A stretch of DNA of 64,000 nucleotides from Hypanus sabinus (Eukaryota), in the NCBI RefSeq assembly GCF_030144855.1, contig NC_082720.1, positions 57,598,001 to 57,662,000 on the forward strand. Reading direction: 5' to 3'. A program made the translations under genes and the position numbers. The notes beneath the pieces were generated by a model that made no database searches, was not told the origin of the DNA, and was given only the letters and a program-made list of their open reading frames with translations. Of the stretch, positions 1 through 61,754 are shown piece by piece (position 1 is the first letter of the stretch; the number at the start of each line of letters is the position of its first letter).

Positions 1-41
1 ATTGTCTCGGATCGAAACTATAGGAATGATTTCTCTTGGAA

Positions 42-2480
42 ATGAGAGATAATATAAACTGGCTAGTGAAATATCAAATATTTTACTGTTTGATCACCTC
101 TTGGGATTTTGTTTATGGCCAGATTCGTTATTCTGTACCCGAGGAATTGCAACTGGGTGCCTTTGTTGGGAATATCGCAATTGATTTGGGGCTTGATTTA
201 AAGCAGCTGTCGGCACGTAAATTGCGGGTGGCGCCCAGTCCGAGGAAGCGGTATGTTGACGTCAATTTGGAGAATGGAGTTTTATTTGTGAATGAAAGAA
301 TCGACAGGGAACAGCTTTGCGGACCGAGCCCTCAATGCGTTTTGTCTTTCAACGTTGTGCTTGAAAATCCCCTCGGTCTGCACCAGGTGGAAGTGGAGGT
401 TCTTGATGTAAATGACAACTCTCCCAATTTCCCGAAAAACCAGATCCGGCTGGAAATCTCAGAGAGCAGGGCACCGGGAGCGCGATTCCCCCTTGAAGCT
501 GCGCACGATCCGGACATTGGGACTAATTCCTTGCAGACATATCAGCTCCTTCACAATGAATATTTCACTGTTGATGTACAAGTGCATGATGGCATAGGGA
601 AGTTCCCAGTATTGGTGTTGCAAAGGGCTTTGGATAGGGAAACGTTATCGACCCATAGGTTAACGCTACTTGCAGAAGACGGCGGAGTCCCGGAGAAGTC
701 GGGCACGGTCCAGGTAACAGTCACAGTGAATGATGCGAATGACAACCCTCCTGTTTTCTCACAGTCGGTTTATAAGGTCAATCTGCTAGAATCAGCTCCC
801 ATAGGAACTCTGATTATTATCATAAACGCCACTGATTTGGACGATGGTCCGAATGGAGAGATAACGTACGCCCTCAGCAGCCACAATTCAGCTGCAGTTC
901 ATGAATTAGTCGCTGTAAATTCCAAAACTGGTGAAATCAGACTGAAAAGGCAATTGGATTATGAACAAAGCAAAACATTTATTATTAATCTTGAAGCAGT
1001 CGATAACGGCCCTTACCCAATGCCCCAGCACTGTGATGTCTTGGTGGATGTTATTGATGTAAATGACCACGCTCCCGAACTGTCGGTGACGTCCATCACC
1101 AATTCCGTGACAGAAAATGCTCCAGTGGGAACTGTTATCGCCCTTCTCAGTGCGGAAGATAACGATTCTGGGCAAAATGGGCATGTAGAATGTAGAATTC
1201 CGAATAATGTTCCGTTTAAGTTAGATTCCCCTGTGAACAACAATTGGAAACTGTTTGTACAGCACGTGCTGGATCGCGAGACTACCTCCAGGTATGACAT
1301 TACTGTGACCTGTACGGATGCAGGGACGCCTCCCCTCACATCCAAGGAAACGTTTCAGGTGGAAGTTTCAGATGTAAATGATAATGCGCCCAGTTTTACG
1401 CAGTCTGTATACACGGCAAATGTTATGGAGAACAACGTTATTGGGGGATCCATATTTTCCCTGACAGCTTTTGACCCAGACAGAGGACCGAATGCTCGTC
1501 TGAAATATACTATCCTGAATTCATCGCTAGCTTCTTATGTCTCCATCAACTCGAAGAGTGGTGTCATTTATGCTCAGAGATCGTACGACTACGAGATACT
1601 GAAAATTTTCCGGATATACGTTCGGGTGCAGGATTCAGGAGTCCCGCCCCTCACTAGTAATGTTACAATTGATGTTGTTATCCTTGATCAGAACGATAAT
1701 GCCCCGGTGATCGTGCATCCTCTGCCCGAGTATGGGTCAACAGTAATGGAGACAATAAGCAGATCTGCTGAACCTGGATATCTCGTTGCCAAGGTCTCAG
1801 CTACTGACGCCGATACTGGTCAGAATGCTCGTCTGTCTTACCACATTTTTCAGGATACCCATCCCGATCTCTTCACTATTTCAGCAGACACCGGTGAAGT
1901 TTGGACTATCCGTGATATTCAAAACAAAGACGCTTCAAAACAAAGGCTGGTGATTGTTGTGAACGATAATGGAACGCCCTCACTGTCAGCCACAGTAACC
2001 ATAGTAATATCTGTGACAGGTAGTGAAACGATATCCAGCGCCACAGGTCTAAGTGAAGATCGTGAGCTCTCTCCTAAACTGAACTTTTACTTAGTCATAG
2101 CGTTAGGGTCCACATCTTTAATTTTCCTCGTAATTTTAATTACTCTTGCTATTAAAGTTCATAATAACAGAAACGGAATGGAATGCCAGTACAATATTTG
2201 TTGCTGTATGGAAACAAGCAACTTTCTAAATGGAACTCAGAAAGCCAGTAGAAGCCTTCAGATTCCACCGAACTATGTTGAGGTATTTGGAGGTGATCCA
2301 CTTTCTCAGAGTTTCCGTTACGAGTCGTGTTCGACTTTGCAGTCTGTCAAAAGGAACTTCACGGCCCCCCACAAGCATGGACAATCTGCAGGTATTACCT
2401 TCGCACAGCAGGAACCTCTTGAGAAGGGAAGTGCAGGAATGGTAAAGCCTAAAATCTACAGCTGCCATACAAATAACGAG
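42..2480 (+). CDS. Clustered protocadherin variable exon 1 (signal peptide, EC1-6, TM, variable cytoplasmic domain)
   Basis: ORF 36..2489; ATG at 42; QIRYSVPEE N-terminus, DREQLC, repeated DxNDNxP/LDRE/DYE cadherin motifs, TM segment; phase-0 donor GAG|GTGAGT at 2480/2481; read-through stop at 2489. Promoter lies upstream of the window. Confidence 0.95.
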
Positions 2481-5304: not shown

Positions 5305-5486
5305 TGTGCACCATTAAATGTATGCCCCAAATTAAACACTTCTTGCTTTAAGGAATGAGCTGAATTCTAATTGGTCAGATATGAATGCTATATTACCCAC
5401 CAATCAGAAGCTGAGTTGTGACTGGTGATCCGCACAGCCCCCTTCAATACACAGCCGCCATCGCTTAAGATCAGTCGCCGTGAAAA
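5305..5486 (+). promoter_or_regulatory. Conserved promoter cassette of gene 2
   Basis: TGTGCA 5305, TAAAT 5315, GCTTTAAG 5345, ATTGG 5370, CCAAT 5400, CTGGTGATCC 5422, then CCGCCAT..GATCAG..GTGAAAA. Confidence 0.85.
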
Positions 5487-5683
5487 CTGCCTTGCCAGCA
5501 GCACTGGAGGATTGGAACTCGGTTCTTTTCAAATTGGAACAATATAAGAACATTTCTAAGCTAACAGCAGAGGATATATCAAAAAGGTACGGATATTTTC
5601 TACGTCGCAGTTTCCCATTTAAATAAATCGCAGTTTCAGGGCATTGTCTCGGCTGGAAACCATTGGAATGATTTCTCCTGGAA

Positions 5684-8113
5684 ATGAGAGACAATATATA
5701 CTGGCTGCTGAAATACCAACTGTTTTTCTGCCTGTTCACCTGTTGGGATTTTGTTAGTGGCCAGATTCGATATTCTGTACCCGAGGAATTGCAACTGGGT
5801 GCCTTAGTTGGAAATATCGCAATCGATTTGGGGTTAAATTTAAAGCAGCTGACTGCTCGCAGTTTGCGGGTGGCGCCTAGTCCGATGAAGCGGTATGTTG
5901 ACGTTAATTTGGAGAATGGAATTCTATTTGTGAATGAAAGAATCGACAGGGAACAACTTTGCGGGCCGAACACCGAATGCTTTTTATCATTCGATGTTGT
6001 GCTTGAGAATCCCCTCGGTCTGCATCTGGTGGAAGTGGAGATTCTTGATATAAATGACAACTCTCCCAGTTTCCCTAAAAACCAGATCCGCTTGGAAATT
6101 TCAGAGATTATGGCACCGGGAGCGCGATTCCCCCTCGAGGCCGCGCACGATCCGGATATTGGAACTAATTCCGTAGAGGCATATCAGCTCCTTCCCAATG
6201 ATTATTTCTTTCTTGATTTACAAGTACACGGTGGTATAGGGAAGTTCCCAGTATTGGTGTTGCTAAGGGCATTGGACAGAGAAACGATATCGACCCATCA
6301 GTTAGTTCTAATTGCCGAAGACGGCGGAGATCCTGTGAGATCGAGCAGAGTCCAGGTAAAAATTACAGTGACGGATGCGAACGACAACTCTCCTGTTTTC
6401 TCGCAGTCGATTTATAAGGCCAAAATGTTAGAGTCGGTTCCCATAGGAACTCTAATTATTATGTTAAACGCCACAGATGTAGACGATGGCACGAATGGAG
6501 AGATAACGTACGCCCTTGGCAGCTATAATTCAGCTGACGTTCGCGAATTAGCTGCCGTGAATTCCAAAACTGGTGAAATCAGACTGAAAGAGCACTTGGA
6601 CTATGAACAAAGAAAAAGTTTTGTAATTAATATTCAAGCAGTTGATAATGGACATCCCGCAATGTCTGATCACTGTGATGTCCTGGTGGAGGTTATCGAT
6701 GTGAACGACAACGCTCCTGAATTGACGGTGACGTCGATCTCAAATGACGTGCCAGAAAACGCTACAGTGGGAACTACTATCGCACTGCTCCGTGCAGAGG
6801 ATAAGGATTCTGGGGAAAATGGACAAGTACAATGTCGAATTCCGAATGAGCTTCCCTTTAAGATGAATTCCTATATAAGTAACAATTGGAAATTGTTCGT
6901 AGACCATGCGCTGGATCGTGAAACTACCTCCAGATATGATATTACTGTGACTTGCACAGATGCAGGGGCCCCCTCTCTTACATCGAAGGAAACGATCCGT
7001 GTGGAAATTTCAGATGTAAATGATAATGCACCAAGATTTACGCAGTCTGTATACACGATAAATATAATGGAAAACAACATTATTGGAGATTCGATATTCT
7101 CCCTGACGGCTTTCGATCCAGACTCGGGGCAGAATTCCCTGTTGAAATTTACTATCCTGAATTCAGCTGGAGCTTTATATGTCTCCATCAACTCACAGAC
7201 TGGTGTTATCTTTGCTCAGAGATCTTTTGACTATGAGAAACTGAAAAGCTTCCAGATCCAAGTTCAGGTGCAGGACTCTGGAGTCCCAGCCCTCACCAGT
7301 AACGTTACAATTGATGTTGTTATCCTTGATCAGAACGATAATACCCCAGTGATCGTGCATCCTTTACCCGAGTATGGGTCAACTGTAATGGAGACAATGA
7401 GTAGGTTTGCTGAACCTGGATACCTCGTTGTCAAGGTCTCGGCTACTGACGCCGACGCTGGTCAGAATGCCCGTCTGTCTTACCACATTTTTCAGGCTAC
7501 CAATCGTGACCTGTTTACTATTTCAACAGACACAGGTGAAGTTTGGACTGTCCGGACTATTGAGAGCAAGGATGCTTCTAAACAAAGACTAATGATTGTC
7601 GTAAAAGATAACGGAACGCCCTCACTTTCAGCCGCAGTAACCATCTTAATATCCGTGACAGGAAGTGAAACGGTCTCCAGTGCCACCAGTTTAAGTAAAA
7701 ATCGCCAGTTCTCCCCTGACCTGAACTTTTATCTAGTTATAGCATTAGGAACGACATCTATAATTTTCCTTATAATTTTAATTATCCTTGCTATGAAAGT
7801 TTATAACAGAACTGGAATGGGATGCCAAAACAATATCGGTTGCTGTCTGGATACAAGAAACTTTCTTAATGGGACTCAGAAGGCCAGTAGAAGCCTTCAG
7901 ATACCACCGAACTATGTCGAGGTATTCGGAGGTGATCCACTTTCTCAGAGTTTCCGTTACGAGTCTTGTTCAACATTGCAGTCCATGAAGAGAGACTTCA
8001 CAGCTCCTCGTGGACCATCTACATCTATTCCCTACACCCACAAGAAACCCACTGGGAAAGAAAGCCCTGGGATGTTATATACTGAAGTCTACAGTTGCAA
8101 TACAAATAATGAG
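5684..8113 (+). CDS. Clustered protocadherin variable exon 2
   Basis: ORF 5684..8152; 6 EC + TM + cytoplasmic domain; donor GAG|GTGAGC at 8113/8114, phase 0. Confidence 0.95.
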
Positions 8114-13661: not shown

Positions 13662-14064
13662 GTGAGCTAGTTCGTAAAAGAAATCGTTTGGGAATACTGG
13701 GCCTTTGCCTTTACTGTGACTAATTGCTGTACATATCGAGGTCAAATTTTATTTATGCACAGTGATTTTCATATATATTATAATTTGCTACGTATTCATT
13801 TTAGTATAATTTTCAGGGTTTGTGCGATTCTTTACATTTCTGATACGTTGTTGCACCGTCCTGAAAGCACACAGGATTCCTTTATGACTTTGTACCGAAA
13901 CGAAATGTAATGAACTGCTTAGCAGGTGTTAAACGGGTCTTGTCTTAAACAGTTTATATGTTAATTGTTCCGCGAAGAACTACAGGTATAGCTAAACCCC
14001 CTTGTTGTGAGCACTGTGTTTGAAAGCAGCATTTCATCGCATTTTATTACGGCACCCTCCATCT

Positions 14065-14143
14065 CAGGAGTTCCTAACCTAGTGTTCATGGACCCTTCGG
14101 TTAATGGTAATAGTCCGTGGCATAAAAAGGTTGGGAACCCCTG
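14065..14143. mobile_element. Small MITE with hAT-like terminal inverted repeats
   Basis: CAGGAGTTCCTAACCT ... AGGTTGGGAACCCCTG termini, 79 bp; no clear TSD. Confidence 0.6.
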
Positions 14144-14303
14144 TTTTATTTCAAGCTCGATGGATGAAATGAATGTAAATGCAAGAAAGCGGAAAAACAA
14201 TAAAATCACACAGTACACTGAAAAAACGGAAACATCTACAGAGTGACGACCGAGAGTACTGCCAATGATCTTACTGTATGTCAGTCCTAAATGTGAGGGG
14301 TTC

Positions 14304-14438
14304 NNNNNNNNNNNNNNNNNNNNNNNNNNNNNNNNNNNNNNNNNNNNNNNNNNNNNNNNNNNNNNNNNNNNNNNNNNNNNNNNNNNNNNNNNNNNNNNNN
14401 NNNNNNNNNNNNNNNNNNNNNNNNNNNNNNNNNNNNNN
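14304..14438. other. Assembly gap (135 N)
   Basis: Run of N. Confidence 1.
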
Positions 14439-14751
14439 ACGTGATGCGTATTTCCATTATTTTTTATGTTCTTATATCACGTCCTGTTTCACAGTTGGGA
14501 TCGACAGGAATTGGGGAAGGTTTGGCCTTCGATTGATTTACTATTCACAGGTTTAATTTAATATAATTTGAGATTCACGAGAAATTGAAGCCACAGTCAA
14601 TAATACTGTTTTAATACAATAATACTCAATTTTTCCTCTGGATGAAGTCATGCAATAATATTCTCCACTTTGGGGGAATTATGCTGTGGGTGCAGTCTTC
14701 TGCTTTATGAATTTATGTACTGTTGAAGCCTTATATTGGACACATGAATTA

Positions 14752-17177
14752 CACACTCATTGGCTACCTTACTAGGTAGCTTTTGTACCTAATAAAGTAG
14801 TCATTGAGCGCATGTTGGTGGTTTTTTGCTGACGTAGCCCATTCACTTCGGGGTTCGGTGTGTTGTGAGTTCAGAAATGCTCTTCAGCACACCACTGTTA
14901 TAATGCATGGTTATTTGAGTTACTGTCGCCTTTTTACCTGCTTGAACCAGTCTGACTATCCTCCTCTGCCCTGTCTCACATGACCGCTGCTCACAGTCTT
15001 TCTGTCTAGGTACCATATCAGATGCGGATGTTGGTGACCATGGTTTTCCATACAGATCGATCCCTTGATCTTCCGATGACTTCCATTTCCTCGATGTATA
15101 GCCACCTGACTAGGCTTTTGATGTACATAAGCCGAGGGCTTCCTCTAGGTTTGCTCCCCTCGATCTTTTCAGAGAGTATGAGTGTTTCTAGTTCATCTTT
15201 CCGCATGAGGTGTCCTAGAAATCTGAGTTGCCTTTCTCTTATTGTTGGTATGAGTGATCTAACTGCTTGGACTCTTCTGAGAACTTCTTCATTTGAAGTG
15301 TGTGTGGTCTGTGATATCTTTAACATTCTCCTGTAGAATTCAGCTGCTTCTAGTCTCTTTTCCATTGCTGGGGAAATGGTCCAGCCTTCTCTTCCATAAG
15401 TCAGGATAAAATAAGTGTAGCACTGCAGTATTCTGTTTTTAGTGTACATGCTCACCTTTCTGTCTATTAATATGGTCTTCATTTTCTGGGAAGCTTCTTT
15501 CGCCATTGCTATTCTGTATTTGATATCTATGTCGCACCTGCCATCACTTGTTAGTTGGCTGCCAAGGTATCTGAATTTGTTGACTTGATTGATGCGTGTA
15601 TTTCTGATCTTGATCTTGAGTTTGTATTTCCGATCTTGAGTCAGCTATTAGTACGATGTTATCAGCATATCTGATGTTATTTATATTATGGACTCCAATT
15701 GTGAGTCATTTGAAATCTTTGATACTTCTCAAGATACTTTCACAATACAGGTTGAATAAGTCGGTTGAAAAGACACAACCTTGCCTGACTCCTCTTATGA
15801 TATTCACATACTCACTCACTTCTCCTTCTATTCAGATGGATGCTGTCTGGTCCCAGCATAAGTTTCTTAAGAGAAGTATATCTTTCCCATTTATGTCAAG
15901 ATCTTGAAGCATTTCCAGGAGATCCTGGTGTCTGGCAGTGTCCAAAACTTTTGTATACTCGATGAAACATAGGTAGATATGTCTTTTTGTACCTGGAATG
16001 CTCGTTCACAGATCATCCGTAGCATGACAATTGCATTTCTGGTTCCAATATTTTCCACAAAGCCGCATTGTTCTTTACTGATATCTGGTTTTATACAGCG
16101 TCTTGCTCTCATCATGATAACTCTGAGAATAATTATTGCCACATGGCTCATCAAGCTTATTGTACGATGTAACTCATATTCTGTAGCTCCCTCTTTCTCT
16201 GGAAGTGTGATGAACACTGATTTACATAAATCATCATGTATCTCCCAATGATCAAAGTTTTCATTTGCTATTTCTGTTATTTTCTCTATTCCAAAATCTT
16301 CTAAGGCCAGTTTCATTTCAACAGTGATGTTGTCTGCACCATTGCTCTGTTATGATTTGTTTTATTTATGGTTTTTTATGATTTTAGAATATTAGGTCCT
16401 TCAAAAGTCTTCTTTATGTTCGGTTTTCTCCTCTTTGGTCTTCAAAGTTTTGTATTATATATTCTGTCCATCTGTTTAGGATTTCCTCTTTGCTCATAAT
16501 TAAACTGTCGTCTTTTGCCTCGGTGCATCCACTTGCTGAGCAAGATAATTTCCCCGTTAGTTCTTTAATCTTACTGTGCATCATCTTTGTTCCAGAGTTA
16601 TGGGTTTGTAGCATTTCTGTCTCTAAGCATTTCTCATTTAGCCATCTGTCTTTAGCTTCTCTGCATTTTCTTTTTATTGTCTTATCAAGTTGTTTGTATT
16701 CTTCACTGTCTCTTGGCTTGATGGTCTGTTTTTGGTACATCAATTGTATTATGTCTTCAGGTATCCATTTATCCATTTCTTACTTTTCCATTCTTTTCAT
16801 GCAGCTTCAACCATGGATTCCTTCAGTATGTCCGAGGAAGATTTGCCTCCTTCATTCTGCAACTGCTCACTAGAGGTCTCTTTTTTCACTGTTTTCCACA
16901 CCATTCTCAGTAAACGGTTGTGTGTGAAAATCCCAGGAGAGCACTTGTTGCTGAGGCACTCAAACCACCCTCTGTAGCGCCAATCACTCCACTGTCAAAG
17001 TCACTTGTATCACATTTCTTCTCCACTCTGATATTTGGTCTGAGCAACAAGAGAACTTCTTGATCATGTCTACTTGCGTTTATCCATTGAATTGCTGCCA
17101 AATCGCTGGCTGGTTAGATAATTGTATTAACGAGCGGACGTACTGGTGTACCTAATAAAGTAGCCACTGAATATACA
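14752..17177 (-). mobile_element. Tc1/mariner non-autonomous remnant split by a LINE insertion (halves 14752-14994 and 16863-17177)
   Basis: TIR-like ends ACACTCATTGGCTACCTTACTAGGTA and TACCTAATAAAGTAGCCACTGAATAT; ORF 16907..17101(-) KKCDTSDFDSGVIGATEGGLSASATSALLGFSHTTV resembles the Tc1 transposase N-terminal HTH. Confidence 0.75.
14995..16862 (-). mobile_element. RTE-clade LINE, 5'-truncated and frameshifted reverse transcriptase
   Basis: Minus-strand ORFs 16414..16776, 15891..16316 (RTISLMSH, EQCGF, GTRNAI) and 15018..15506 (TYGREGWT, QLRFLGHLMR, GSPRL); flanked by 8-bp direct repeat CTGCTCAC (14987, 16863). Confidence 0.85.
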
Positions 17178-17707
17178 CCTAAACTTCTCCCGGTTCAGCG
17201 ACAGAGAAGGATGGACAGTGGCCGTGTTGCCATTAATGTCCTCATCAAATGAATAAAGGAGTATTGACTATTGACAGTAAATTGGTTTGAACACAATCAA
17301 ACCACGGTTGCAAAACCAAAAAGAAAATATTGCAGATGCTGACTTTACACTTCTACCTCCTGCATTTCTATTTTAATTAAATACAAGTATAATCTGCTGA
17401 GATGTAAGCAAACTAAAATGAATGAATGCATTCATTTTGATTTTCACTTGGTTATCTGACAACCATTCACTTCTAATTTAAGATGTGGGATGAAATTTAA
17501 ATTTAAAATAAGTGTCTCAGTGGCAGCAGAGATTGGTTGCTTCTATCTTTTGGAATACTTTTCAAAGATGCATTTTTGGATCTTTATTAATGATTTTGCA
17601 TGTTATAGCTGTGTTATTGCCTTTCCCTGATATAAAATTTTGTGAAGCCAAGGAGAGGGTACAAAAATACTTTCTACTTGTAATTGCATTGATATGTGAA
17701 AATAATA

Positions 17708-18295
17708 TGAACATAAGACATAGAAGAAGAATTAGACCATTCGGCCTATCGAGTCCAGTAGATTTATTATCCCCTCCATCATGGCAGAGTTATTACCCCC
17801 TCAACTCCATTCCCTTACCTGCTCCTTATAACCTTTGACACTCTTACTATTCAAGACCTATCAACCTCTGCCTTAAATATAAGCAATATCTTGACCGCGA
17901 CAGCCGTGGGTTGCAATGAATTCCACAGATTCATCACGTTCTAGACAAAGAAATTCCTCCTCACCTCTGTTCTAAATGGACGTCCTTCTATTATGAGGCT
18001 GTGCCCTCTGGTCCTAGACTCACCACTATAGGAACCATCCTTTCCACGTCTATTCAACCTAGGCCTTTCACTATTCGATAGGTTTCAACTAGCTCCCCCC
18101 TCATTCTTCTGAACTCTAGCGAGTACAAACCAGGATCCATCAAACGCTGCACATACTTTCACCCCTTTATCCAGAGATCAGTATTATGAACCTTCTGTGG
18201 ACTCTCTCCTATTCCAGCACATCCCTTCATATATAAGGGGCCAAGGATTGCTTGCAACTCTCCACGAACGGCCTGACCGTTGCCTTATGAAACAT
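17708..18295 (-). mobile_element. CR1 LINE 3' fragment
   Basis: Begins AACATAAGACATAGAAGAAGAATTAGACCATT, the reverse complement of the CR1 tail at about 29790-29826; body is similar to the reverse complement of 29251-29733. Confidence 0.75.
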
Positions 18296-18834
18296 CAGTA
18301 ATTATCGTAGAACGGTATCTTAATGTGAATAAACTAATCTTATGGATATGTATCACTAAGATGGTACAAGAACTGAATATCTCCACGAACATGAGTTACA
18401 AAAATGAATTCATGAAAAGGATGTCAGTATGAAAAGAATAAATATGGCAAATTGAGAATGACGTTCCATCTCTTCTTTCTAAGCTATGGAAGGTCATACC
18501 TTATATAATATTAACCTGATAGCCATTTCTGGACCTTGAAGGACCTAGCTAATCTGGGTAAAGCATTAAATCCTCCATTAACAAATACGATTGCCTATTT
18601 TAGTGGTTAGTGCTTGTACAACGGGCTTTGGACTTTATCATTAGCTCTTTAGCCCCTGAATTAAACGGTAATTTACATATTGGGGGTATAAAACATAGGA
18701 AAGACAATAGCACTGATTAGTTTATTTTTACGGGATGATGGGATAAAATTCATTATTCCAACAGCAATATGTAACAGCAGATAGATTGACAACCAAGTTA
18801 TCACATTGGCTATTTGTCAGCCTTTGCACCTAGT

Positions 18835-18955
18835 TTTTGATGGATTCTGTTGTATTTCTTTGTTCTACTGTATATGCCTGCAAGAAAACGAATTGCAGAG
18901 CAGCATATGGCGACAGGTTCATATTTTGATAATAAATTTACTTTGAAGTTTGATT
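18835..18955 (+). mobile_element. Rex1-like LINE 3' tail fragment
   Basis: GCCTGCAAGAAAACGAATT...GATAATAAATTTACTTTGAAGTTTGA, similar to 9660-9748 and the reverse complement of 27137-27220. Confidence 0.5.
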
Positions 18956-19183
18956 TTATAATCCAACGTGGGATTAATTATTCTATACCCAGATAATGAA
19001 AGAAATTTTAAGATTAAGTCAAGCCATTTCATTTGTTTCATAACTACGATTTATTTATTTTGAGCATTTTTTTTCTGTTGAGGACCTTGAGGCTGTTAAT
19101 TGTGAATCAATTCCAGATTGTTTACACAACAGGCCAAAACGTGCGGACTACTGGGGAAAAAAGCCTCAAATATAAATTTAAAC

Positions 19184-19372
19184 TGTGCAACGATAAATAT
19201 CATTCTGTGCTCATTTAGGACAACGCGGCTTTAAGAACTGGTGTGCTTCATGATTCGCTGAATATCAGTACGCTTGTGTTCACCAATCAGAAGCTAAGAT
19301 GTCTTTTGGAGATCCGGACTGCCGTCTAGCATTACCCACCCTCCCTTACGTGAGATCAGAAGCGGTGAAAAA
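19184..19372 (+). promoter_or_regulatory. Conserved promoter cassette of gene 4
   Basis: TGTGCA 19184, GCTTTAAG 19228, ATTCG (variant of ATTGG) 19253, CCAAT 19283, TTGGAGATCC 19306. Confidence 0.8.
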
Positions 19373-19575
19373 AATTGGCTGGTCAGCTGCCTCGTATGAT
19401 TTTATTGTGAGAATCCATTGGAAACTGAACAAAAGCTGAAGATGAGGACGAAATGAACTGTGCGATTTATGATCCGGCAGGAGAGTCGAATATCATGGTT
19501 TATAAAAATCTGAATAAAGGGACGAGTAATGGTGGCGTCAGGTACTAACAAACGTTGGAATGGTTTACACTGGAA

Positions 19576-25737: not shown

Positions 25738-25837
25738 GTGAGATGATTGTGTAAATTGGCCGGTCCATAAATGCACATAACTACGGTGTATTGTTGCAGA
25801 TAAATAACCCTTAACTTGCACTTTAAGATTTTTATAA

Positions 25838-33405: not shown

Positions 33406-33719
33406 GTGAGAGGCTTGTTTGGTAGGAGAGGCTTGTTTGGTTAACTCAAATCTGGAAGGGGATTGGCATCAGGGAGTTAACAGATTTTATTTAGCTTATT
33501 GTGCTATTGATCCAGCGCAGACAGAATCAGAAGTGTCGTATCCAATAGGTGTTTACATCAATATACGGTTAAATAATTGTTATGACTACCACTTTGCTGT
33601 CCAATTGTATTGAACCCAGCTGTCCAGGATATCGTACGATATCCGAGTATTTCCATCAAGGTCCGGATCAAATCCTGTTAAATCGTGACACAAAACTCCT
33701 TCCCTTTCTCCCGCGGTGC

Positions 33720-33975
33720 ACACTTCCCTCCTGTCAGGTTCCTTCTTCCCCAGTCCTTTCTCCAACTATCAACTACCAGCTTGCACTCCTTCCGCTCACC
33801 ACACCACCTTATTCTAGCATTCACACTCACCCCCACCTCCCCCCCATCCACTCCCGAGGATGGATCTCAGCCGGAAACGCCGTCTATTTATTCTTCTCCG
33901 GAGATACTGCCTGATTTGCTGAGTTACTCTAACATTTTTGTATGATGCTCTGAATTTCCAGCATCTGCAGTATGT
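33720..33975 (+). repeat. Penelope-like terminal remnant
   Basis: C/T-rich tract then CCGAGGATGGATCTCAGCCGGAAACG..CTGCCTGATTTGCTGAGTTACTC..TTCCAGCATCTGCAGT. Confidence 0.5.
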
Positions 33976-40230: not shown

Positions 40231-40463
40231 TATCATGGACTGAGCTCTCCCTACATTAGGTTCTTTACAATCATCTGTAGGCGAAATTAGAAGAAAGAAG
40301 AAGATTTGTGGGAAATCGTAACGCAGAATTTTATAAGCAGTACGTATAGTTTTATACAATTCCGCTGTATTTTTCAAAATGGAAACATGATTTAACCTTT
40401 TTAGCAGGAATTATTCAACGGCGCTGTGTTGTTCTCAATCCCTGGAAATGCTTTGTGTTGCAA

Positions 40464-44250: not shown

Positions 44251-44487
44251 TATCATGGATAGAGCCGCGTCTCCTTACATTCGGTTCTTTACAATCATCT
44301 ATTGGCGAAATTAGAAGAAAGAGGATGGTTTGTGGGCAATCCTATCTCAAAATTTTATAAGCAGTACGTATGGTTTTATGCAGTTCAGCTGTATTTGTCA
44401 AAATGGAAAAATGATTTAATCTTTTTAGCAGGAATTATTCAAAGGCACTGTGTTGTTCTCAATCCCTGGAAATGCTTTGTGTTGCAA

Positions 44488-46932
44488 ATGGAATTTTATA
44501 AATTATATTTGCTAATGAAATGGAAACTTTTATATTTCATTATCCCTTCCTGGCAAGCAATTTCTGGACAGATACGGTATTCGATTCCTGAAGAATTGAA
44601 TGCCGGTGCCTTTGTAGGGAACATTGCAGAGGACCTGAAATTGAATATAAAGGAACTTTCGGCTCGCGGCTTTCAAATTATGCCTGGACCTAGCAAGCGG
44701 TATTTTGATGTAAATGTGGACAATGGGGTTTTATTTGTGAGGGAAAAAATCGACAGGGAACAGTTGTGTGAACGGAACCTCGCTTGCACGTTATCGGTGG
44801 AAGCAGTGATACAGAATCCTGTAAGTGTGTATCATTTTCAAGTGGACGTTTTGGATGTAAATGACAATGCCCCGAGATTTCCAGACAGCCGCTTTAGTAT
44901 GGAGATATCAGAGGTCGCTGCTCCTGGAACCCACTTCGCTCTGGAGTGCGCCCAGGACCCGGACGTTGGATCCAACTCTGTACAAAGCTACCAGTTAGTA
45001 GAAAATCTTTATTTCACCCTCGATGTTCAGAATCGCGTTGGCGGCGAAAAACTACCGGTTTTAGTGTTGGGAAGACAGCTGGACAGAGAAAAGGAAAGTA
45101 CCCACAGGGTGGAGTTGGTAGCTAAGGATGGAGGGGTTCCTGAGAGATCTGGCACTGCTGAGATATTGATCGTTGTTGAGGATGCCAATGACAACGCGCC
45201 TGTTTTCCCGCAACCTGCCTACAGGATCAGTTTGCGAGAGAATTCACCCAAAGGAAAATTAGTGATTAAATTACATGCCACCGATTTGGATGCTGGAGTC
45301 AATGGGCAGGTATTGTACTCGTTTAGTAGTCATACTTCAAATAGAGTTCGTGAAATGTTTGGGCTGGATTCCAAATCTGGCGAAATCAGAATTAAGAATA
45401 ATTTGGACTACGAGGAAAATAGCGTTTTTGAGATAAATGTCCAAGCAAAAGATCAGGGTCCAAACGCAACTCCTGTATATTGTCACGTGGTGGTTAATAT
45501 TGTTGATATGAATGACAACGCTCCTGTGATTACATTGACATCTTCCTTCAGTCCAATCCGCGAAGATTCACTCCCGGGAACTGTAGTGGCTCTCATCAGT
45601 TCAACAGACAAGGATTCAGCTGAGAACGGGGACCTGGATTGCGAAATCACAAAGGAACTTCCGTTTAAACTAGAGTCATCCTCGCGAAACTATTACAGTC
45701 TGGTTACCCAGGAGAGACTGGATCGTGAACATCTATCAGCCTACAATGTGACTGTCCTGTGTACCGACGCTGGGGTTCCTCCTCTCACATCAAACAAAAC
45801 GATCCTGGTGGAGGTCTCGGATATAAATGATAACTCACCCCAGTTTATACAGCCTGTATATACAGCTTATGTGATGGAGAATAACGCCATAGGTACATCC
45901 ATTTTCACTGTAACTGCTTTCGATCAAGATTTAAATAGGAACGCCGATGTGTCATACTTTATTTCGGAGAGTCAGATTCAGGGCATGTCAGTGTCTGCAT
46001 ATGTCTCTATTAACTCCCTCAGCGGTGTCATATTTTCGCAGAGAAGTTTCGACTTCGAGAATCTCAAACACTTTAAGATCTTGGTTCAGGCGCGGGATTC
46101 TGGTTCCCCACCACTTTCTGGAAATGCCTCAGTGGATGTAATTATCTTGGATCAGAATGACAATGCCCCAGTAATCGTGCAACCTTTACCCGAAATCGGC
46201 TCCACTGTGTCAGAGACCATATCCAGGCTCGCAGAACCAGGTTACCTAGTTACGAAGGTTTCTGCTACCGACGGTGACTCTGGCCAGAATGCTCGCCTTA
46301 CCTACCAGATTCTCCGAGCTACTGAGGTCGGTCTCTTCACCATTTCACCGGACACGGGAGAAATCTGGACAATACGCAGTATTAGTAAGAATGACGCCGC
46401 CAAACAAAGGCTGGTCATCTGTGTTAAGGACGATGGATCACCGCCACTGACGGCCACAGTGACAATCATTCTGTCTTTAGTTGGAAATGATGAACAATTG
46501 CTGTCGAAGCTGAATAGTTTGTCTGAGGATCCAGAGATTGCTTTTGATACCAGCTTTTACCTCGTAATAGTTTTAGGGGTCACCTCCTCCGTGCTCCTGA
46601 TGATTTTGATTATTCTCGCCGTAAAGGTTCATAGATCCTCTTCTCTTGGCGCATGTGGTTGTTTTGCAGTAAGAAACTCGTTACATGGATTTCAAAGAGG
46701 CAAAAGAACCCTCCAGATACCACCAAACTACGTTGAAGTGTTTGGGGGTGATCCACTTTCTCAGAGTTTCCGCTACGATTCATGCTCAAGTTCACATTCT
46801 GTGAAGAGGGATTTCAGGTTGTCCAGCAGCAGATCTACGCGTAAGGATTTTACTCCGAGTGGCATTCTGGGAAATGGCGATACTTTACAATCCGCCAACA
46901 CTGCGCAGTGCAAGAATACTGTAAATAATGAG
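44488..46932 (+). CDS. Clustered protocadherin variable exon 9
   Basis: Within ORF 44302..47001; ATG 44488; donor GAG|GTGAGG at 46932/46933, phase 0. Confidence 0.95.
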
Positions 46933-48382: not shown

Positions 48383-48635
48383 TATCATGGATAGATCTGC
48401 TTGTCCTTACTAGAGCTGCTTGTCCTTACATTCGGATCTTTATAATAATCTATTGGCGAAATTAGAAGAAATAAGAAGGTTTGTCGAAAATCCTAAAGCG
48501 GGCGTTTTAAGCAGTACAAAAGATTTTGTACAATTCAGCTGTATTGTTAAAATTAACCATGATTTATTCATTGTAGCCGGAATTATTCAACGGCGCTGCG
48601 TTGTTTTCAGTCGTTTGAAATGCTTTGTGCTGGAA

Positions 48636-51077
48636 ATGGAATTTTATAAATTATATTGGCTAATGAAATGGAAACTTTTATATTGTTTTATCCCTTCCTG
48701 GCAAGTAATTTCTGGACAGATACGTTATTCGATTCCTGAAGAATTGAATGTCGGCGCCTTTGTTGGGAATATCGCAGAGGACCTAAATTTGGATATAAAG
48801 GAACTTCCATCTCGCGGATTTCAAATTGTGCCAGGACCAAGTAAGCAGTATATAGATGTAAATTTAAACAGTGGGGTTTTAGTTGTGAAGGAAACAATGG
48901 ACAGAGAACTGTTGTGCGAGCAGAGCCTCGCCTGCACGTTATCTCTGGAAGCGGTGATTCAAAATCCTCTAAATATGTATCATTTTCAAGTGGACGTTAT
49001 GGACGTAAATGATAATGCCCCGAGTTTTCCTGAGAGTCGTTTTAAGTTGGAAATATCGGAGGTGGCTGCCCCAGAAACGCGGTTCGCTCTGAAGTGCGCA
49101 CAGGACCCGGACGTTGGATCGAACTCGGTACAAAGCTACCAGTTATTGGAGAACGGCTATTTCTCTCTCGATGTCGAGACGCGGGGTGGCAGCGAAAAAT
49201 TACCGGTCTTAGTCTTGGAAAGACAGCTGGACAGAGAAAAGGAAAGTACCCACAGGTTGGTGTTGATAGCTGCGGATGGAGGGGTTCCTGAGAGATCTGG
49301 CACTGCTGAGATATTGATCGTTGTTGAGGATGCCAATGACAACGCGCCTGTTTTCCCCAAGCCTCTATACAGAGTTAGTTTGCCAGAGAATGCACCCAAA
49401 GGAACATTAGTGATTAAATTAGATGCCACCGATTTGGATGCTGGAGTCAATGGGCAGATATTGTATTCGTTTAGCAGTCATACTTCAAATAGAGTTCGTG
49501 AAATGTTTGGGCTGGATTCCAAATCTGGCGAAATCAGAATTAAGAATAATTTGGACTACGAGGAAAATAGAGTATTTGAGATAAATGTCCAAGCAAAAGA
49601 TCAGGGTCCAAACGCAACTCCTGTATATTGTCACGTGGTGGTTAACATTGTTGATGAGAACGACAACGCTCCTATGATTACACTGACATCTTTATTCAGT
49701 CCTATCGGCGAAGATTCCCCACCGGGGACTGTGGTGGCTCTGATTAGTTCAACAGACAAGGATTCAGCTAAAAACGGGGATTTGGACTGCGAAATCCCAA
49801 AGGACCTTCCATTTAAACTAGTTTCCTCTTTACAAAAATATTATAAACTGGTTATCTGGGAGAGACTGGATCGTGAACATGTATCAGCCTACAATGTAAC
49901 TGTTGTGTGCACCGACGCTGGGGTTCCTCCTCTCACATCAAACAAAACGATCCTGGTGGAGGTCTCGGATATAAATGACAACCCACCCCAGTTTACACAG
50001 CCTGTATATACAGCTTATGTGATGGAGAATAACGCCATAGGTGCATCCATTTTCACTGTAACTGCTTTCGATCAAGATTTAAATAGGAACGCCGATGTGT
50101 CATACTTTATTTTGGAGAGTCAGATTCAGGGCATGTCAGTGTCTGCATATGTCTCGATTAACTCGCTGAGCGGTGTTATATTTTCGCAGAGAAGTTTCGA
50201 CTTCGAGAATCTCAAAAACTTTCAGATCCTGGTTCAGGCGCGGGATTCTGGTTCCCCACCACTTTCTGGAAATGCCTCAGTGGATGTAATTATCTTGGAT
50301 CAGAATGACAATGCCCCAGTAATCGTGCAACCTTTACCCGAATTTGGCTCCACTGTGTCAGAGACCATATCCAGGCTCGCAGAACCAGGTTACCTAGTTA
50401 CGAAGGTTTCTGCTACCGACGGTGACTCTGGCCAGAATGCTCGCCTTACCTACCAGATTCTCCAAGCTACTGAGGTCGGTCTCTTCACCATTTCACCGGA
50501 CACGGGAGAAATCTGGACAATACGCAGTATTAGTAAGAATGACGCTGTCAATCAAAGGCTGGTCATCTGCGTTAAGGACAATGGATCACCACCACTGACG
50601 GCCACAGTGACTATCATTCTGTCTTTAGTTGGAAATGATGGGCAACTGTTGTCGGAGCTGAACGGTTTGTCTGAGGATCCAGGGTTTGCTTCTGATACCA
50701 GCTTTTACCTCGTAATTGCTTTAGGGGTCACCTCCTCCGTGTTCCTGGTGATTTTGATTATTCTCGCCATAAAGGTTCATAGATCCTCTTCTCTTGGCGC
50801 ATGTGGTTGTTTTACAGTAAGAAACTCGTTACATGGATTTCAAAGAGGCAAAAGAACCCTCCAGATACCACCAAACTACGTTGAGGTATTTGGGGGTGAT
50901 CCACTTTCTCAGAGTTTCCGCTACGATTCATGCTCAAGTTCACATTCTGTGAAGAGGGATTTCAGGTTTTCCAGCAGCGGAGCTATGCGTAAGGATTTTA
51001 CTCCTGGTGGCATTCTGGGAAATGGCGATACTTTACAAACCTCCAAGTCTGCGCAGTACAGGAATACTTTAAATGAG
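48636..51077 (+). CDS. Clustered protocadherin variable exon 10
   Basis: Within ORF 48420..51146; ATG 48636; donor GAG|GTGAGG at 51077/51078, phase 0. Confidence 0.95.
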
Positions 51078-59205: not shown

Positions 59206-59429
59206 TTACATAGCAAGCGATGTGAGATTGTATCTGAATCGTGATATTTACAAGGTTTGGCAAGATTTAACTACAAAGAGAAATCACGAAGCCATATCAC
59301 AGCTGCAGGTATTTTTTTTTGTAGAATGGAAGTCCGTATTTGGAATTTTTAAACATAACCATTTTATTCCAGTGAATGACTGGGCAGCGCCGGGACGTGC
59401 TGAAGCATTCGGAATGCATTTTGTGTGAA

Positions 59430-61754
59430 ATGGGACTGTGTAAAATATACTGGTTGTTAAAATGGCAACTATTATGTTCAGTGTTCTCCTGGAGGCTAAT
59501 TTCTGGACAGATACGTTACTCCATTCCCGAAGAATTGCAGTCGGGCGCCCTTATTGGGAATCTCGCAGCTGATCTGGGTTTAGATGTAGAGCAGCTCTCA
59601 GCTCGGAATTTCCGTATTGTGTCCAGTCCCACGAAACAGTATCTGTATGTAAAACTAGACAAAGGCGTTTTACTTGTCAACCAGAAAATTGACAGAGAAC
59701 TCATCTGTGGTTCAGCCCTCGGTTGCGCGTTGACACTGGAGGCAGTTATTGACGAACCTCTGAATGTGTATCATATCGAGGTGGAGATTGTAGACATAAA
59801 CGACAACGCTCCCCAGTTCCCAAAGAACGAGATACGTTTGGAAATATCCGAGGGAATGTCGCCTGGAGTCCGCTTCCCTTTAGAGTCTGCTTTTGATCCG
59901 GACGTAGGCAGCAACTCACTGCAGACCTACCAACTGGCTACAAATCAATATTTCCAACTGGATGTACAGTCTCGCAGTGGGGATGGTAAGCTCCCGGTTC
60001 TGGTAATGGAAAGAGCTCCCGACCGGGAGCAACAGTCTACTCTGCATTTGCTGCTGACGGCTCTTGACGGGGGCATTCCTGAACGATCGGGCACCGCACA
60101 GATTATTATCCGCATCTTGGATGCCAATGACAACATGCCTACGTTCAGCCAGGCGCTTTACAGAGTCAGATTGCTGGAAAATGTACCCACGGGAACGCTA
60201 GTGATCAAAGTGAATGCCACCGATCTGGACGAAGGTTCCAATGGAGAGATAGTTTATTCATTTGGTAGTCACGCTTCTGTCAAAGCACGGGAACTTTTCA
60301 GCATAGACCCTAAAACTGGAGAGATTAGAGTGAAAGGGCCTCTGGATTTTGAAACGGGAACAGAGTTGGAGATTAGCATACAAGCTGAGGACAGGGGATT
60401 CCTCTCTGTACCTGTGCATTGCGATGTGCTTGTTGAAATCGTAGATGTGAACGATAACGCGCCAGAGGTGGCAGTGACCTCTCTGACAAGTTCAGTCGCC
60501 GAAGATGTCCCGCCAGGGACGATGGTAGCCCTAATCAGTGTGACCGATTCAGACACGGGACAGAATGGAGAAACTCGCTGCCAGATACCAAAGAATCTTC
60601 CTTTCAAATTAGACCCGACGTTTAAAAACTACTACCGGTTGCTCACCAAAGATTTACTCGATCGGGAAATGGCTTCTCAGTATGTCATCGCCATTACCTG
60701 CAGTGATGCGGGATTGCCTGTGCTTACCACTAACAAGACTATTCAGTTAAAGATCACAGATGTAAACGACAATCCTCCGCGTTTCTCGCAGACTTTGTAC
60801 ACTGCCTATGTGACGGAGAACAATGTGATTGGCAGTTCCATATATTCAGTGTCAGCTTCTGATGCAGATGTAAATCAGAATTCCAGACTGTCTTATTCTA
60901 TTCTTCAGACGTGGACCGGCGGTTTTCCTGTATCCGGCTACGTTTCTATAAATTCAGAAAACGGCGTAATATCCGCTGAGCGTTCTTTTGACTACGAAGA
61001 ACTGAAGAAATTTCAAATCGAAGTCCAAGCTACGGACGCTGGGGAGCAACCACTGAGCACGAATGCATCGATCAATGTGGTCATCCTGGATCAGAATGAC
61101 AACGCTCCGGTAATAATATCCCCAAGGCCCGAGTACGGTTCGACAGCAGAGGAGACGTTGTCCAGATCAGCAGAACCAGGTTATCTGGTGACCAAAGTAT
61201 CTGCTGTCGATGCAGATTCGGGACAGAATGCAAGACTTACTTACCAAATGGCCCAGGTTACCGACCCTAGTCTTTTCACCATTGCACCTGACACGGGGGA
61301 GATATGGACAAGCCGTCGAGTTACCAATGAAGATGCAACAAAACAAAGCGTGGTAGTCGTGGTAACTGATAATGGGGTCCCACCACTTAAGGCTACAATT
61401 AATATAATATTAACATTTGAGGGCAGTCACACAGAACTTCTCTCAGAATCGAGCAGCGTCAGTGGCGAACTGGGATTCCCTTCGCAAATAAGCCTTTACT
61501 TGGTTATAGCTTTAGGAGTAATTTCATCAGTCTTCCTAGTAATATTACTTATCCTAGCTGCTCAGCTCTACAGAAGCAGGAACATTTTTTACCGTCGCAG
61601 ATGCGCTTTGGACACGTGTTGTATGAGTTCTACACATTCTCTTAATGGAATACAAAAAGCCAGTGTAAACCTTCAAATCCCCCCGAATTATGTTGAAGTG
61701 TTTGGCCGTGATCCGCTCTCCCAGAATTATTGTTACGAGGTATGTTCCTCATAA
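59430..61754 (+). CDS. Clustered protocadherin variable exon 13 (truncated tail, shifted donor or incipient pseudogene)
   Basis: ORF 59376..61754; ATG 59430; intact EC1-6 and TM; TAA at 61752 precedes the ancestral donor at 61889/61890; alternative in-frame donor GAG|GTATGT at 61739/61740. Confidence 0.85.
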   Translation: MGLCKIYWLLKWQLLCSVFSWRLISGQIRYSIPEELQSGALIGNLAADLGLDVEQLSARNFRIVSSPTKQYLYVKLDKGVLLVNQKIDRELICGSALGCALTLEAVIDEPLNVYHIEVEIVDINDNAPQFPKNEIRLEISEGMSPGVRFPLESAFDPDVGSNSLQTYQLATNQYFQLDVQSRSGDGKLPVLVMERAPDREQQSTLHLLLTALDGGIPERSGTAQIIIRILDANDNMPTFSQALYRVRLLENVPTGTLVIKVNATDLDEGSNGEIVYSFGSHASVKARELFSIDPKTGEIRVKGPLDFETGTELEISIQAEDRGFLSVPVHCDVLVEIVDVNDNAPEVAVTSLTSSVAEDVPPGTMVALISVTDSDTGQNGETRCQIPKNLPFKLDPTFKNYYRLLTKDLLDREMASQYVIAITCSDAGLPVLTTNKTIQLKITDVNDNPPRFSQTLYTAYVTENNVIGSSIYSVSASDADVNQNSRLSYSILQTWTGGFPVSGYVSINSENGVISAERSFDYEELKKFQIEVQATDAGEQPLSTNASINVVILDQNDNAPVIISPRPEYGSTAEETLSRSAEPGYLVTKVSAVDADSGQNARLTYQMAQVTDPSLFTIAPDTGEIWTSRRVTNEDATKQSVVVVVTDNGVPPLKATINIILTFEGSHTELLSESSSVSGELGFPSQISLYLVIALGVISSVFLVILLILAAQLYRSRNIFYRRRCALDTCCMSSTHSLNGIQKASVNLQIPPNYVEVFGRDPLSQNYCYEVCSS

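What the first reader, a model, noticed from the sequence alone, without database searches (positions are those of the whole stretch)
26..59432. All 13 protocadherin genes carry an out-of-frame ATG exactly 16 nt upstream of the start codon
Seen: upstream ATG / main ATG pairs are 26/42, 5668/5684, 11216/11232, 19560/19576, 23268/23284, 30936/30952, 36450/36466, 40448/40464, 44472/44488, 48620/48636, 52301/52317, 55825/55841 and 59414/59430. The offset is -16 in 13/13 and there is always a G at -3 (GGA/GAA/GCA-ATG), although the 5' leaders of the different subfamilies otherwise align poorly. In 12 genes the uORF overlaps the main ATG: 8-9 codons in genes 1, 4 and 6-11 (e.g. MLCVANGIL*), 29-52 codons in genes 2, 3, 5 and 12. 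Only gene 13, which is damaged elsewhere, stops before the main ATG (MHFV*). It is not main-frame protein conservation, because genes 1-3 and 12 have an in-frame TGA there. Established: an overlapping uORF in decent Kozak context makes the main ORF depend on leaky scanning. Inference: a cluster-wide translational control that lowers or equalises isoform dosage, which would matter for combinatorial cell-surface identity codes. I know of no description of this for cPcdhs. Alternative: a DNA motif (GGAATG is TEAD-like in genes 1-6 and 13), but the bases 5' of AATG vary while ATG and its distance do not.
Basis: partly seen in the sequence, partly recalled or inferred. Interest (0 to 1): 0.88.

Follow-up and report, generated by a model that had tools for sequence, protein, structure and literature searches.

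The report
Conserved upstream ATG before protocadherin starts
Every protocadherin gene in this stingray cluster, and nearly every related gene checked in a sawfish and a whale shark, keeps an extra out-of-frame ATG 16 bases before its start codon; it probably diverts some ribosomes from the real start, but that has not been shown.

Summary
All 13 variable exons in the window have an ATG exactly 16 nt upstream of the start codon. The ATG sits in an invariant G-N-A-A-T-G.

I fetched related genes from Pristis pectinata (10) and Rhincodon typus (4). Across all 27 genes, 25 keep the ATG at -16, one has it at -15, and one has lost it (AGG). On the gene tree the five core bases show 0-1 changes per site, against 7-8 at neighbouring sites, which matches the start codon itself. 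Several paralog lineages predate the shark/ray split. A teleost (0/7) and a snake (0/2) lack the ATG.

The uORF peptide and its length (1-52 codons) are not conserved, and no RNA structure or Rfam family was found. A rigid CCAAT/YY1-like promoter block lies 273-334 nt upstream. This suggests, but does not prove, that the ATG is in the 5' UTR.

Best reading (about 0.5): a conserved upstream start that forces leaky scanning. Main rival (about 0.3): a DNA element that happens to contain ATG.

The assembly gap is intergenic and irrelevant. The scan also noted the same feature (unchecked) for nine genes in the adjacent upstream window (s1-213485).

The parts
23..44 (+). Gene 1: GGAATG block (uATG 26-28) to main ATG (42-44); uORF of 8 codons, stop ends at +11
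5665..5686 (+). Gene 2: GGAATG block (uATG 5668) to main ATG 5684; uORF of 29 codons
11213..11234 (+). Gene 3: GGAATG block (uATG 11216) to main ATG 11232; uORF of 52 codons
19557..19578 (+). Gene 4: GGAATG block (uATG 19560) to main ATG 19576; uORF of 8 codons
23265..23286 (+). Gene 5: GGAATG block (uATG 23268) to main ATG 23284; uORF of 39 codons
30933..30954 (+). Gene 6: GGAATG block (uATG 30936) to main ATG 30952; uORF of 9 codons
36447..36468 (+). Gene 7: GAAATG block (uATG 36450) to main ATG 36466; uORF of 9 codons
40445..40466 (+). Gene 8: GAAATG block (uATG 40448) to main ATG 40464; uORF of 9 codons; main ATG has C at -3
44469..44490 (+). Gene 9: GAAATG block (uATG 44472) to main ATG 44488; uORF of 9 codons; main ATG has C at -3
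48617..48638 (+). Gene 10: GAAATG block (uATG 48620) to main ATG 48636; uORF of 9 codons
52298..52319 (+). Gene 11: GCAATG block (uATG 52301) to main ATG 52317; uORF of 9 codons
55822..55843 (+). Gene 12: GAAATG block (uATG 55825) to main ATG 55841; uORF of 48 codons
59411..59432 (+). Gene 13: GGAATG block (uATG 59414) to main ATG 59430; uORF of 4 codons ending at -2, as in the Pristis ortholog
5370..5500 (+). Example (gene 2) of the distal conserved promoter-like block used to infer the TSS: ATTGG, CCAAT (5400), GGnGATC at CCAAT+24, CCAT[CT] at about CCAAT+57. The same block precedes genes 3-13, with CCAAT at 10949, 19283, 22950, 30641, 36149, 40150, 44170, 48302, 52000, 55548 and 59118.

Best explanation
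The -16 ATG is a conserved upstream start codon in the 5' leader of every nu-type protocadherin mRNA of sharks and rays. A scanning 40S subunit meets it first, in an adequate context (G at -3, usually no G at +4). Ribosomes that start there read a short, non-conserved ORF in another frame, which in most genes runs past the main AUG and stops 11-14 nt (sometimes 70-140 nt) downstream. Those ribosomes cannot make protocadherin. Only ribosomes that scan past the upstream AUG reach the main AUG, apart from rare re-initiation. The upstream ORF stops more than 2 kb before the exon junctions to the constant exons, so its use could also expose the mRNA to nonsense-mediated decay. The net effect would be a built-in damping of protein output, the same for every isoform. 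Shown here: the ATG, its context and its spacing are under strong purifying selection, and the peptide is not conserved. Inferred: that the ATG is transcribed, that it is used, and the size and purpose of the effect.
For: 13/13 genes in the window have the ATG. Across 27 genes in three species, 25 have it at -16, one at -15 and one has lost it. Fitch changes per site on the gene tree are 0, 0, 0, 1, 0 for G-19, A-17, A-16, T-15, G-14, against a mean of 7-8 at -60..-22 and 0 for the main ATG. The gene 11 and gene 12 lineages have shark orthologs with 100/100 support, so the ATG has been kept separately in several paralog lineages since before the shark/ray split. Its spacing to the main ATG is fixed, while the rigid CCAAT/GGnGATC/CCAT block sits 273-334 nt from the ATG. 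CCAAT boxes usually lie 60-100 bp upstream of the TSS (PMC4889920) and YY1 motifs lie just downstream of it (PMC11160661). That places the likely TSS about 200 nt or more upstream of the uATG. The uORF peptide and length vary from 1 to 52 codons, including ATG-TAG in one whale-shark gene, so what is conserved is the start codon and not a product. No consensus RNA structure and no Rfam family was found. N-terminally extended protein models of Scyliorhinus, Heptranchias and another Hypanus gene read Glu-Cys at codons -6/-5 (GAR-TGY), which is compatible with the same AATG.
Against: No transcript, TSS or ribosome data could be obtained; the gene coordinates returned by the tools are CDS only. G(-19) is always G and never A, and A(-17) and TT(-11/-10) are nearly invariant. 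Neither is required of a start codon, and both look like motif recognition. The main ATG sits in a similar TGGAA(A)TG context, so the two may be copies of one motif. ATG is not depleted in -240..-17 relative to its permuted triplets (86 against about 87), so there is no sign that a long leader is under selection against upstream ATGs. Either the real leader is short or extra uATGs are tolerated. One intact Pristis gene has lost the ATG (AGG) and has no upstream ATG nearer than -50. The overlap with the main ATG is no more frequent than chance. The feature is absent from the teleost and snake protocadherins sampled.
Confidence: 0.5

Rival explanations
1. The conserved unit is a DNA element (T-N-G-N-A-A-T-G-N-N-T-T) inside the promoter-proximal block. 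It is bound by a transcription factor or is part of the core promoter or TSS region, and the ATG is an accident of the motif.
For: Invariance extends to G(-19), A(-17), T(-21) and TT(-11/-10), beyond what a start codon needs. The core is TEAD/M-CAT-like (GGAATG) in 18 of 27 genes, and in 12 of 27 it overlaps an inverted CCAAT (ATTGG at -22). The whole -50..+15 stretch is constrained at the nucleotide level. Upstream ATGs are not depleted, so the scanned leader may be short. The gene that lost the ATG keeps the rest of the block (GGAAGGCTTTG).
Against: The three ATG bases are the most conserved positions of the block. No single known motif fits all genes: position -18 is G, A or C, which breaks the TEAD core in 9 of 27, and ATTGG is absent in 15 of 27. 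The position is locked to the start codon and not to the rigid promoter block, whose distance varies by 61 nt. I had no motif library to scan against.
Confidence: 0.3
2. The block is an RNA-level element in the 5' UTR, either a binding site for an RNA-binding protein or a small structure around the start codon, and does not act through initiation at the AUG.
For: It is anchored to the start codon. U-rich sequence follows the AUG. A weak UUU/AAA pairing between the post-uAUG bases and the pre-AUG bases can be drawn by eye in many genes (my reading).
Against: RNAalifold finds 0 consensus pairs in -60..+30 across 22 genes. There is no Rfam match. The hand-drawn 3-5 bp A-U stem would be too weak to matter.
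Confidence: 0.1
3. The ATG was inherited from the ancestral gene and persists without any function of its own, through hitch-hiking or gene conversion.
For: All the genes are paralogs from tandem duplication. Genes 7-10 are recent copies (84-93% protein identity).
Against: Neighbouring sites have changed 7-8 times on the same tree while the core changed 0-1 times. Subfamilies are only 53-62% identical in protein, and several predate the shark/ray split. The flanks are too diverged for conversion to explain the pattern.
Confidence: 0.03

Closest known systems
Conserved upstream/overlapping ORFs (uORF/oORF) that repress vertebrate main ORFs by forcing leaky scanning
   Same: An out-of-frame AUG lies close upstream of the main AUG in an adequate Kozak context. 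In 22 of 27 genes its ORF overlaps the main start. The start codon is conserved and the peptide is not.
   Different: Here the same uAUG, at the same distance, is kept in every member of a large tandem gene family (27 genes checked, and 9 more noted by the scan) for roughly the age of elasmobranchs. Neither transcription nor translation of it has been shown.
Clustered-protocadherin promoter CSE / CGCT box (a CTCF site about 200 bp upstream of the ATG in mammals and Xenopus; PMC4978886, PMC7811963)
   Same: A short element repeated before every variable exon at a fixed distance from the start codon.
   Different: The -16 block lies about 180 bp closer to the ATG, has no CGCT core and does not resemble the CTCF consensus as I recall it (hand comparison only, no scan). 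The element at about the CSE position in these genes is a CCAAT/YY1-like block.
TEAD / M-CAT site (GGAATG)
   Same: 18 of 27 genes read GGAATG at the core.
   Different: 9 of 27 read GAAATG or GCAATG, which changes the core, while the ATG stays invariant.
TISU (translation initiator of short 5' UTR; consensus SAASATGGCGGC, recalled from memory)
   Same: A dual-purpose element at the start codon of mRNAs with very short leaders. It becomes relevant if the TSS turns out to lie just upstream of -16.
   Different: The main-start context is TGGAAATG(A/G)GA, which does not match the consensus. The leader length is unknown.

Membership tests
Conserved regulatory uORF/oORF (start-codon dependent, peptide independent) | The upstream AUG lies within the transcribed 5' leader | not testable with these tools
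   No transcript or TSS data were available. This is only inferred from the CCAAT/YY1-like block 273-334 nt upstream (PMC4889920, PMC11160661).
Conserved regulatory uORF/oORF (start-codon dependent, peptide independent) | The AUG is conserved beyond neutral expectation in orthologs and paralogs | tested here: met
   25 of 27 genes at -16 and 1 of 27 at -15. 0-1 changes per site against 7-8 in the flanks.
Conserved regulatory uORF/oORF (start-codon dependent, peptide independent) | Out of frame with the main ORF, and either overlapping its start or ending just before it | tested here: met
   22 overlap and 4 end 2-11 nt before the main ATG. The overlap frequency is what chance would give.
Conserved regulatory uORF/oORF (start-codon dependent, peptide independent) | A usable initiation context (purine at -3 and/or G at +4) | tested here: met
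   All 26 upstream ATGs have G at -3, and 2 of them have G at +4.
Conserved regulatory uORF/oORF (start-codon dependent, peptide independent) | Ribosome initiation at the uAUG and repression of the main ORF | not testable with these tools
   This needs ribosome profiling or reporter assays.
Peptide-dependent (stalling) uORFs | Conserved uORF peptide and length | tested here: not met
   Lengths are 1-52 codons. The shared G-N/D-G/E residues are just the main-start context read in another frame.
Protocadherin CSE / CGCT-box CTCF site | A motif of about 22 bp with a CGCT core, about 200 bp upstream of the ATG | tested here: not met
   The block lies at -21..-9 and has no CGCT. CGCT occurs only sporadically at about -45 (genes 8, 10, 11).
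TEAD / M-CAT site | GGAATG core in every copy | tested here: not met
   Position -18 is G in 18, A in 7 and C in 2 of 27 genes.
Structured RNA element / Rfam family | Conserved base pairing, or a match to a curated covariance model | tested here: not met
   0 consensus pairs and 0 Rfam hits in the window.

The most novel reading that the evidence does not exclude
The fixed uAUG is a family-wide quality gate tied to promoter choice. Transcripts that begin at the proper, possibly very proximal, start site would present the uAUG too close to the cap to be recognised and would be translated normally. Read-through or aberrant long-leader transcripts from upstream promoters of the cluster would present it in full context and would be silenced by out-of-frame initiation and nonsense-mediated decay. 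Only the stochastically chosen isoform would then reach the cell surface. This would be a translational layer of the protocadherin identity code, present in cartilaginous fish and replaced or lost in bony vertebrates.
Probability: 0.1. Interest if true: 0.85.

Novelty: new member of a known kind. Interest (0 to 1): 0.55.

Why it matters
Clustered protocadherins are thought to be controlled almost entirely by promoter choice (CTCF, DNA methylation, looping). A start-codon-proximal upstream AUG kept in every isoform of a cartilaginous-fish cluster for hundreds of millions of years would point to a translational or mRNA-stability layer of control, a layer that none of my literature searches turned up for this family. 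It also gives a simple, testable handle: a one-base change per isoform. If it turns out to be a DNA element instead, it still marks an unrecognised, highly conserved cis-element of a protocadherin promoter type that uses CCAAT/YY1-like boxes, with no mammalian-type CGCT element seen at the corresponding position.

Tried and rejected
1. Fetching orthologous DNA from Hypanus and Carcharodon failed because the sample files were too large. One isoform product was not on record.
2. A search with the N-terminal 160 aa, meant to find transcript-derived fragments, gave only 4 hits. The two contigs fetched (L001, L002) are other protocadherin types of unknown organism, without the -16 ATG.
3. No Callorhinchus DNA was reachable. 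One N-extended elephant-shark protein reads Gly-Cys (GGN-TGY) at the site, which leaves the ATG undetermined.
4. Yu et al. 2008 (elephant-shark cluster) and Wu et al. 2001 (CSE) are not held in the library.
5. I tested for depletion of upstream ATGs as a way to map the scanned leader. A mononucleotide shuffle suggested 25% depletion, but comparison with permuted triplets showed none, so this was not informative.
6. A CAG|GTA (donor-like) motif at about -110 and Y-tract-CAG (acceptor-like) sites at about -55 suggested a mini-intron in the 5' UTR. It is not present in all subfamilies, G at +5 is rare, and the implied intron would be only about 55-65 nt, so I did not adopt it.
7. I rejected heat-shock, STAT, C/EBP, POU and NFAT-like readings of the block by eye, because none fits all 27 genes.
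8. Hand comparison of the -45 and -250 blocks with the CTCF consensus as I recall it gave only 9 of 15 matches, so I did not call them CTCF sites.
Full report
**Observation**

Reading the window at the 13 listed coordinate pairs shows ATG at both positions in every case, always 16 nt apart. The 13 long ORFs are protocadherin variable exons of 774-852 codons.

- G is at -3 of every upstream ATG.
- The uORFs have 8-9 codons in genes 1, 4 and 6-11.
- The uORFs have 29, 52, 39 and 48 codons in genes 2, 3, 5 and 12.
- Gene 13 reads MHFV*.
- Genes 1-3 and 12 have an in-frame TGA at -15.

The pattern GNAATG-N13-ATG occurs 19 times in the window against 3.45 +/- 1.8 in shuffles, and 13 of those are the gene starts.

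The assembly gap at 14304-14438 lies in the 5.9-kb spacer between genes 3 and 4. It is 634 nt past the end of the gene 3 ORF and 5.1 kb before the gene 4 uATG, and nothing in that spacer resembles protocadherin coding sequence. No ATG pair and no reading frame depends on it. I did not try to fill it.

**What and whose the genes are**

Two of the window's own proteins are on record on a contig of 93,688,977 bases. That is the same length as the contig carrying a Hypanus sabinus protocadherin. Gene 3 is 97.6% identical to a Hemitrygon akajei protein. The window is therefore from an Atlantic stingray chromosome.

The nearest named relative in the elephant shark is 'protocadherin nu17' (58-64% identity).

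The 13 genes fall into about eight subfamilies that are only 53-62% identical to each other. In a maximum-likelihood tree, gene 11 groups with a Pristis and a Carcharodon gene, and gene 12 groups with Pristis, Rhincodon and Hemiscyllium genes, both with 100/100 support. Genes 13 and 10 pair with Pristis genes. The gene 1-4 clade has a shark sister clade. Several of the paralog lineages are therefore older than the split of sharks and rays.

**Conservation outside the window**

I could fetch DNA for Pristis pectinata (L003, L005, L008; 10 variable exons) and Rhincodon typus (L004, L007; 4 exons).
- Nine Pristis genes have ATG at -16. One intact gene has AGG there (L005:10001).
- Three whale-shark genes have ATG at -16, one of them as ATG-TAG.
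- One whale-shark gene has the same AATG one base closer (-15), followed by CAT-TGA.

In total, 25 of 27 genes have the ATG at -16, one at -15 and one has lost it.

Protein models with N-terminal extensions from Scyliorhinus, Heptranchias and another Hypanus gene read Glu-Cys at codons -6/-5 (GAR-TGY), which is compatible with the same AATG. One Callorhinchus model reads Gly-Cys, which leaves the ATG undetermined.

In a teleost cluster (Stegastes, L006) none of the 7 homologous starts has the ATG, and in a snake (Thamnophis, L009) neither of 2 does. The feature therefore belongs to the cartilaginous-fish nu-type genes and not to clustered protocadherins in general.

An unchecked note of this scan (s1-213485) reports the same uORF for nine further genes in the window just upstream in the same genome.

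**How strong the constraint is**

I stacked the 27 starts without gaps, adding one gap for the -15 case. Fitch parsimony on the protein tree gives these changes per site:

| Site | Changes |
|---|---|
| G(-19), A(-17), A(-16), G(-14) | 0 each |
| T(-15) | 1 |
| T(-11) | 1 |
| Main ATG | 0 |
| Mean over -60..-22 | 7-8 |

Information content gives the same picture. The conserved unit is G-N-A-A-T-G followed by N-T-T-T, inside a moderately conserved block from about -50 to the start codon. This cannot be simple inheritance, because neighbouring sites are saturated on the same tree.

**What is not conserved**

The uORF product is not conserved. Its length ranges from 1 to 52 codons. Its stop is usually at +11 or +14 but is lost through synonymous changes of the main frame in genes 2, 3, 5 and 12. 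The residues that look shared are the main-start context read in another frame.

22 of the 25 uORFs at -16 have no stop in the first four codons, where chance would give about 20-21. The overlap with the main ATG is therefore a consequence of proximity and not a selected trait.

RNAalifold finds no consensus pairing in -60..+30, and Rfam finds nothing in the window.

**Where the transcript probably starts**

An alignment of 330 nt upstream of 22 genes shows a second, much stronger conserved block shared by all subfamilies and all three species:
- an inverted CCAAT (ATTGG);
- a CCAAT box about 30 nt downstream of it;
- GGnGATC exactly 24 nt after the CCAAT;
- a CCGCCAT[CT] (YY1-like) box about 57 nt after the CCAAT;
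- then a CRE-like ACGT(C/A)AGATCAG.

Another note of the scan (s1-213497) reached the same NF-Y/YY1-like reading, and I confirmed it independently for this window.

CCAAT boxes normally lie 60-100 bp upstream of the TSS (PMC4889920), and YY1 motifs lie within about 30 bp downstream of it (PMC11160661). This places the probable TSS around -230, near the position of the CSE in mammals and Xenopus (about 200 bp upstream of the ATG; PMC4978886, PMC7811963). On this reading the -16 ATG is in the 5' UTR. That is inference only.

Two cautions apply:
- The YY1-like box reads CCAT on the sense strand, which as I recall is the reverse of the usual ATGGCGGC orientation for YY1 sites downstream of a TSS.
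- ATG is not depleted between -240 and -17 relative to its permuted triplets, so there is no evolutionary sign of a long leader that avoids upstream ATGs. Most of those other ATGs open short ORFs that stop well before the main ATG.

The distal block is internally rigid, but its distance to the start codon ranges from 273 to 334 nt, while the uATG stays at -16. The proximal element is therefore anchored to the start codon and not to the promoter.

**Mechanism**

The most likely reading is a conserved upstream start codon. A scanning ribosome meets it first, in an adequate context (G at -3, rarely G at +4). The main ATG has nearly the same context, TGGAA-ATG, with G at +4 in 12 of 27 genes. In genes 8 and 9 the main ATG has C at -3.

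Ribosomes that start at the uATG read past the main ATG in 22 of 27 genes, or stop 2-11 nt before it in four genes. Protocadherin synthesis would then depend on leaky scanning, plus perhaps some re-initiation. The early stop, far upstream of the junctions to the constant exons, could also feed nonsense-mediated decay.

I put this at about 0.5. That is roughly 0.7 that the ATG is in the mRNA, times about 0.7 that the ATG is what is selected and not a motif that merely contains it.

**Rivals**

A DNA element is the main rival (about 0.3):
- G(-19) is always G although A would serve a start codon at least as well.
- A(-17) and TT(-11/-10) are nearly invariant.
- The core is TEAD-like in 18 of 27 genes.
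- The one gene that lost the ATG keeps the rest of the block.

Against this rival, no known motif fits all copies, the ATG bases are the best-conserved positions, and the spacing is tied to the start codon.

An RNA-protein or structural element is possible but has no support (about 0.1). Pure inheritance is excluded by the site-wise contrast.

**Comparison with what is known**

Conserved overlapping uORFs are an established class of translational repressor. This case would be a new member of that class, unusual in being kept at one fixed position across a whole tandem family.

It is not the protocadherin CSE/CGCT box, because the position is wrong and there is no CGCT. It is not a peptide-dependent uORF, it does not match TISU as I recall that consensus, and it matches no Rfam family.

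Full-text searches for protocadherin together with uORF found nothing relevant. The protocadherin promoter papers I could read do not mention such an element. The elephant-shark cluster paper was not available, so I cannot exclude that it shows the motif.

**Verdict**

The translational interpretation is reasonable and is favoured slightly over a DNA-motif reading, but it rests on an inferred TSS and on no expression data. The dosage-equalising purpose is speculation. The finding is of moderate interest and is directly testable with public RNA-seq or CAGE data and simple reporters.

Noticed in passing
window 5370-5500 (gene 2); same block before genes 3-13, with CCAAT at 10949, 19283, 22950, 30641, 36149, 40150, 44170, 48302, 52000, 55548, 59118; also in L003, L004, L005, L007, L008: A rigid promoter-like block of about 120 nt is shared by all subfamilies and by Pristis and Rhincodon. 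It consists of ATTGG, CCAAT about 30 nt later, GGnGATC at CCAAT+24, CCGCCAT[CT] at about CCAAT+57, and then ACGT(C/A)AGATCAG. It lies 273-334 nt before the ATG, about where mammals have the CSE, and only gene 2 has a CGCT there.
   Followed up: partly
window about -125..-100 of genes 2, 3, 11, 12, 13 (e.g. 5585, 11131, 52200, 55730, 59307) and the Rhincodon and Pristis orthologs: A conserved (C)AGGTA(T)TTT motif lies about 110 nt upstream of the ATG and looks like a splice donor or a ZEB-type E-box. In several genes a pyrimidine tract followed by CAG lies at about -55. A 5' UTR mini-intron of 55-65 nt is conceivable, but the signals are weak and not universal.
   Followed up: partly
window 59376-59432 (gene 13) and L008:13556-13612: The gene 13 subfamily also keeps an in-frame ATG at -54 with no stop before the main ATG (MTGQRRDVLKHSECILCE-M... 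in Hypanus, MNEQRRDVPIHSECVVLE-M... in Pristis). NCBI annotates the Pristis protein from that upstream ATG.
   Followed up: no
window 40461-40466 and 44485-44490 (genes 8, 9): The main start codon has C at -3 (GCAAATGG), a weaker context than in the other genes, while the upstream ATG keeps G at -3.
   Followed up: no
protein models P0081 (Heptranchias) and P0122 (Mobula): Automatic gene models join the end of one variable exon to sequence 40-50 nt upstream of the next variable exon's ATG, or fuse three variable exons into one product of 2,892 aa. These are either annotation artefacts or a hint that acceptor-like sites before variable exons are used.
   Followed up: no
window 13671-19575: This is the longest spacer in the array (5.9 kb) and contains the assembly gap at 14304-14438. 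No protocadherin-like coding remnant was detected in it by tblastn.
   Followed up: yes
window 33610-33729 (minus strand, spacer between genes 6 and 7): A short antisense tblastn match (44 aa, 52% identity, E 1e-7) to residues 455-498 of gene 6, probably a fragment of a decayed variable exon.
   Followed up: no
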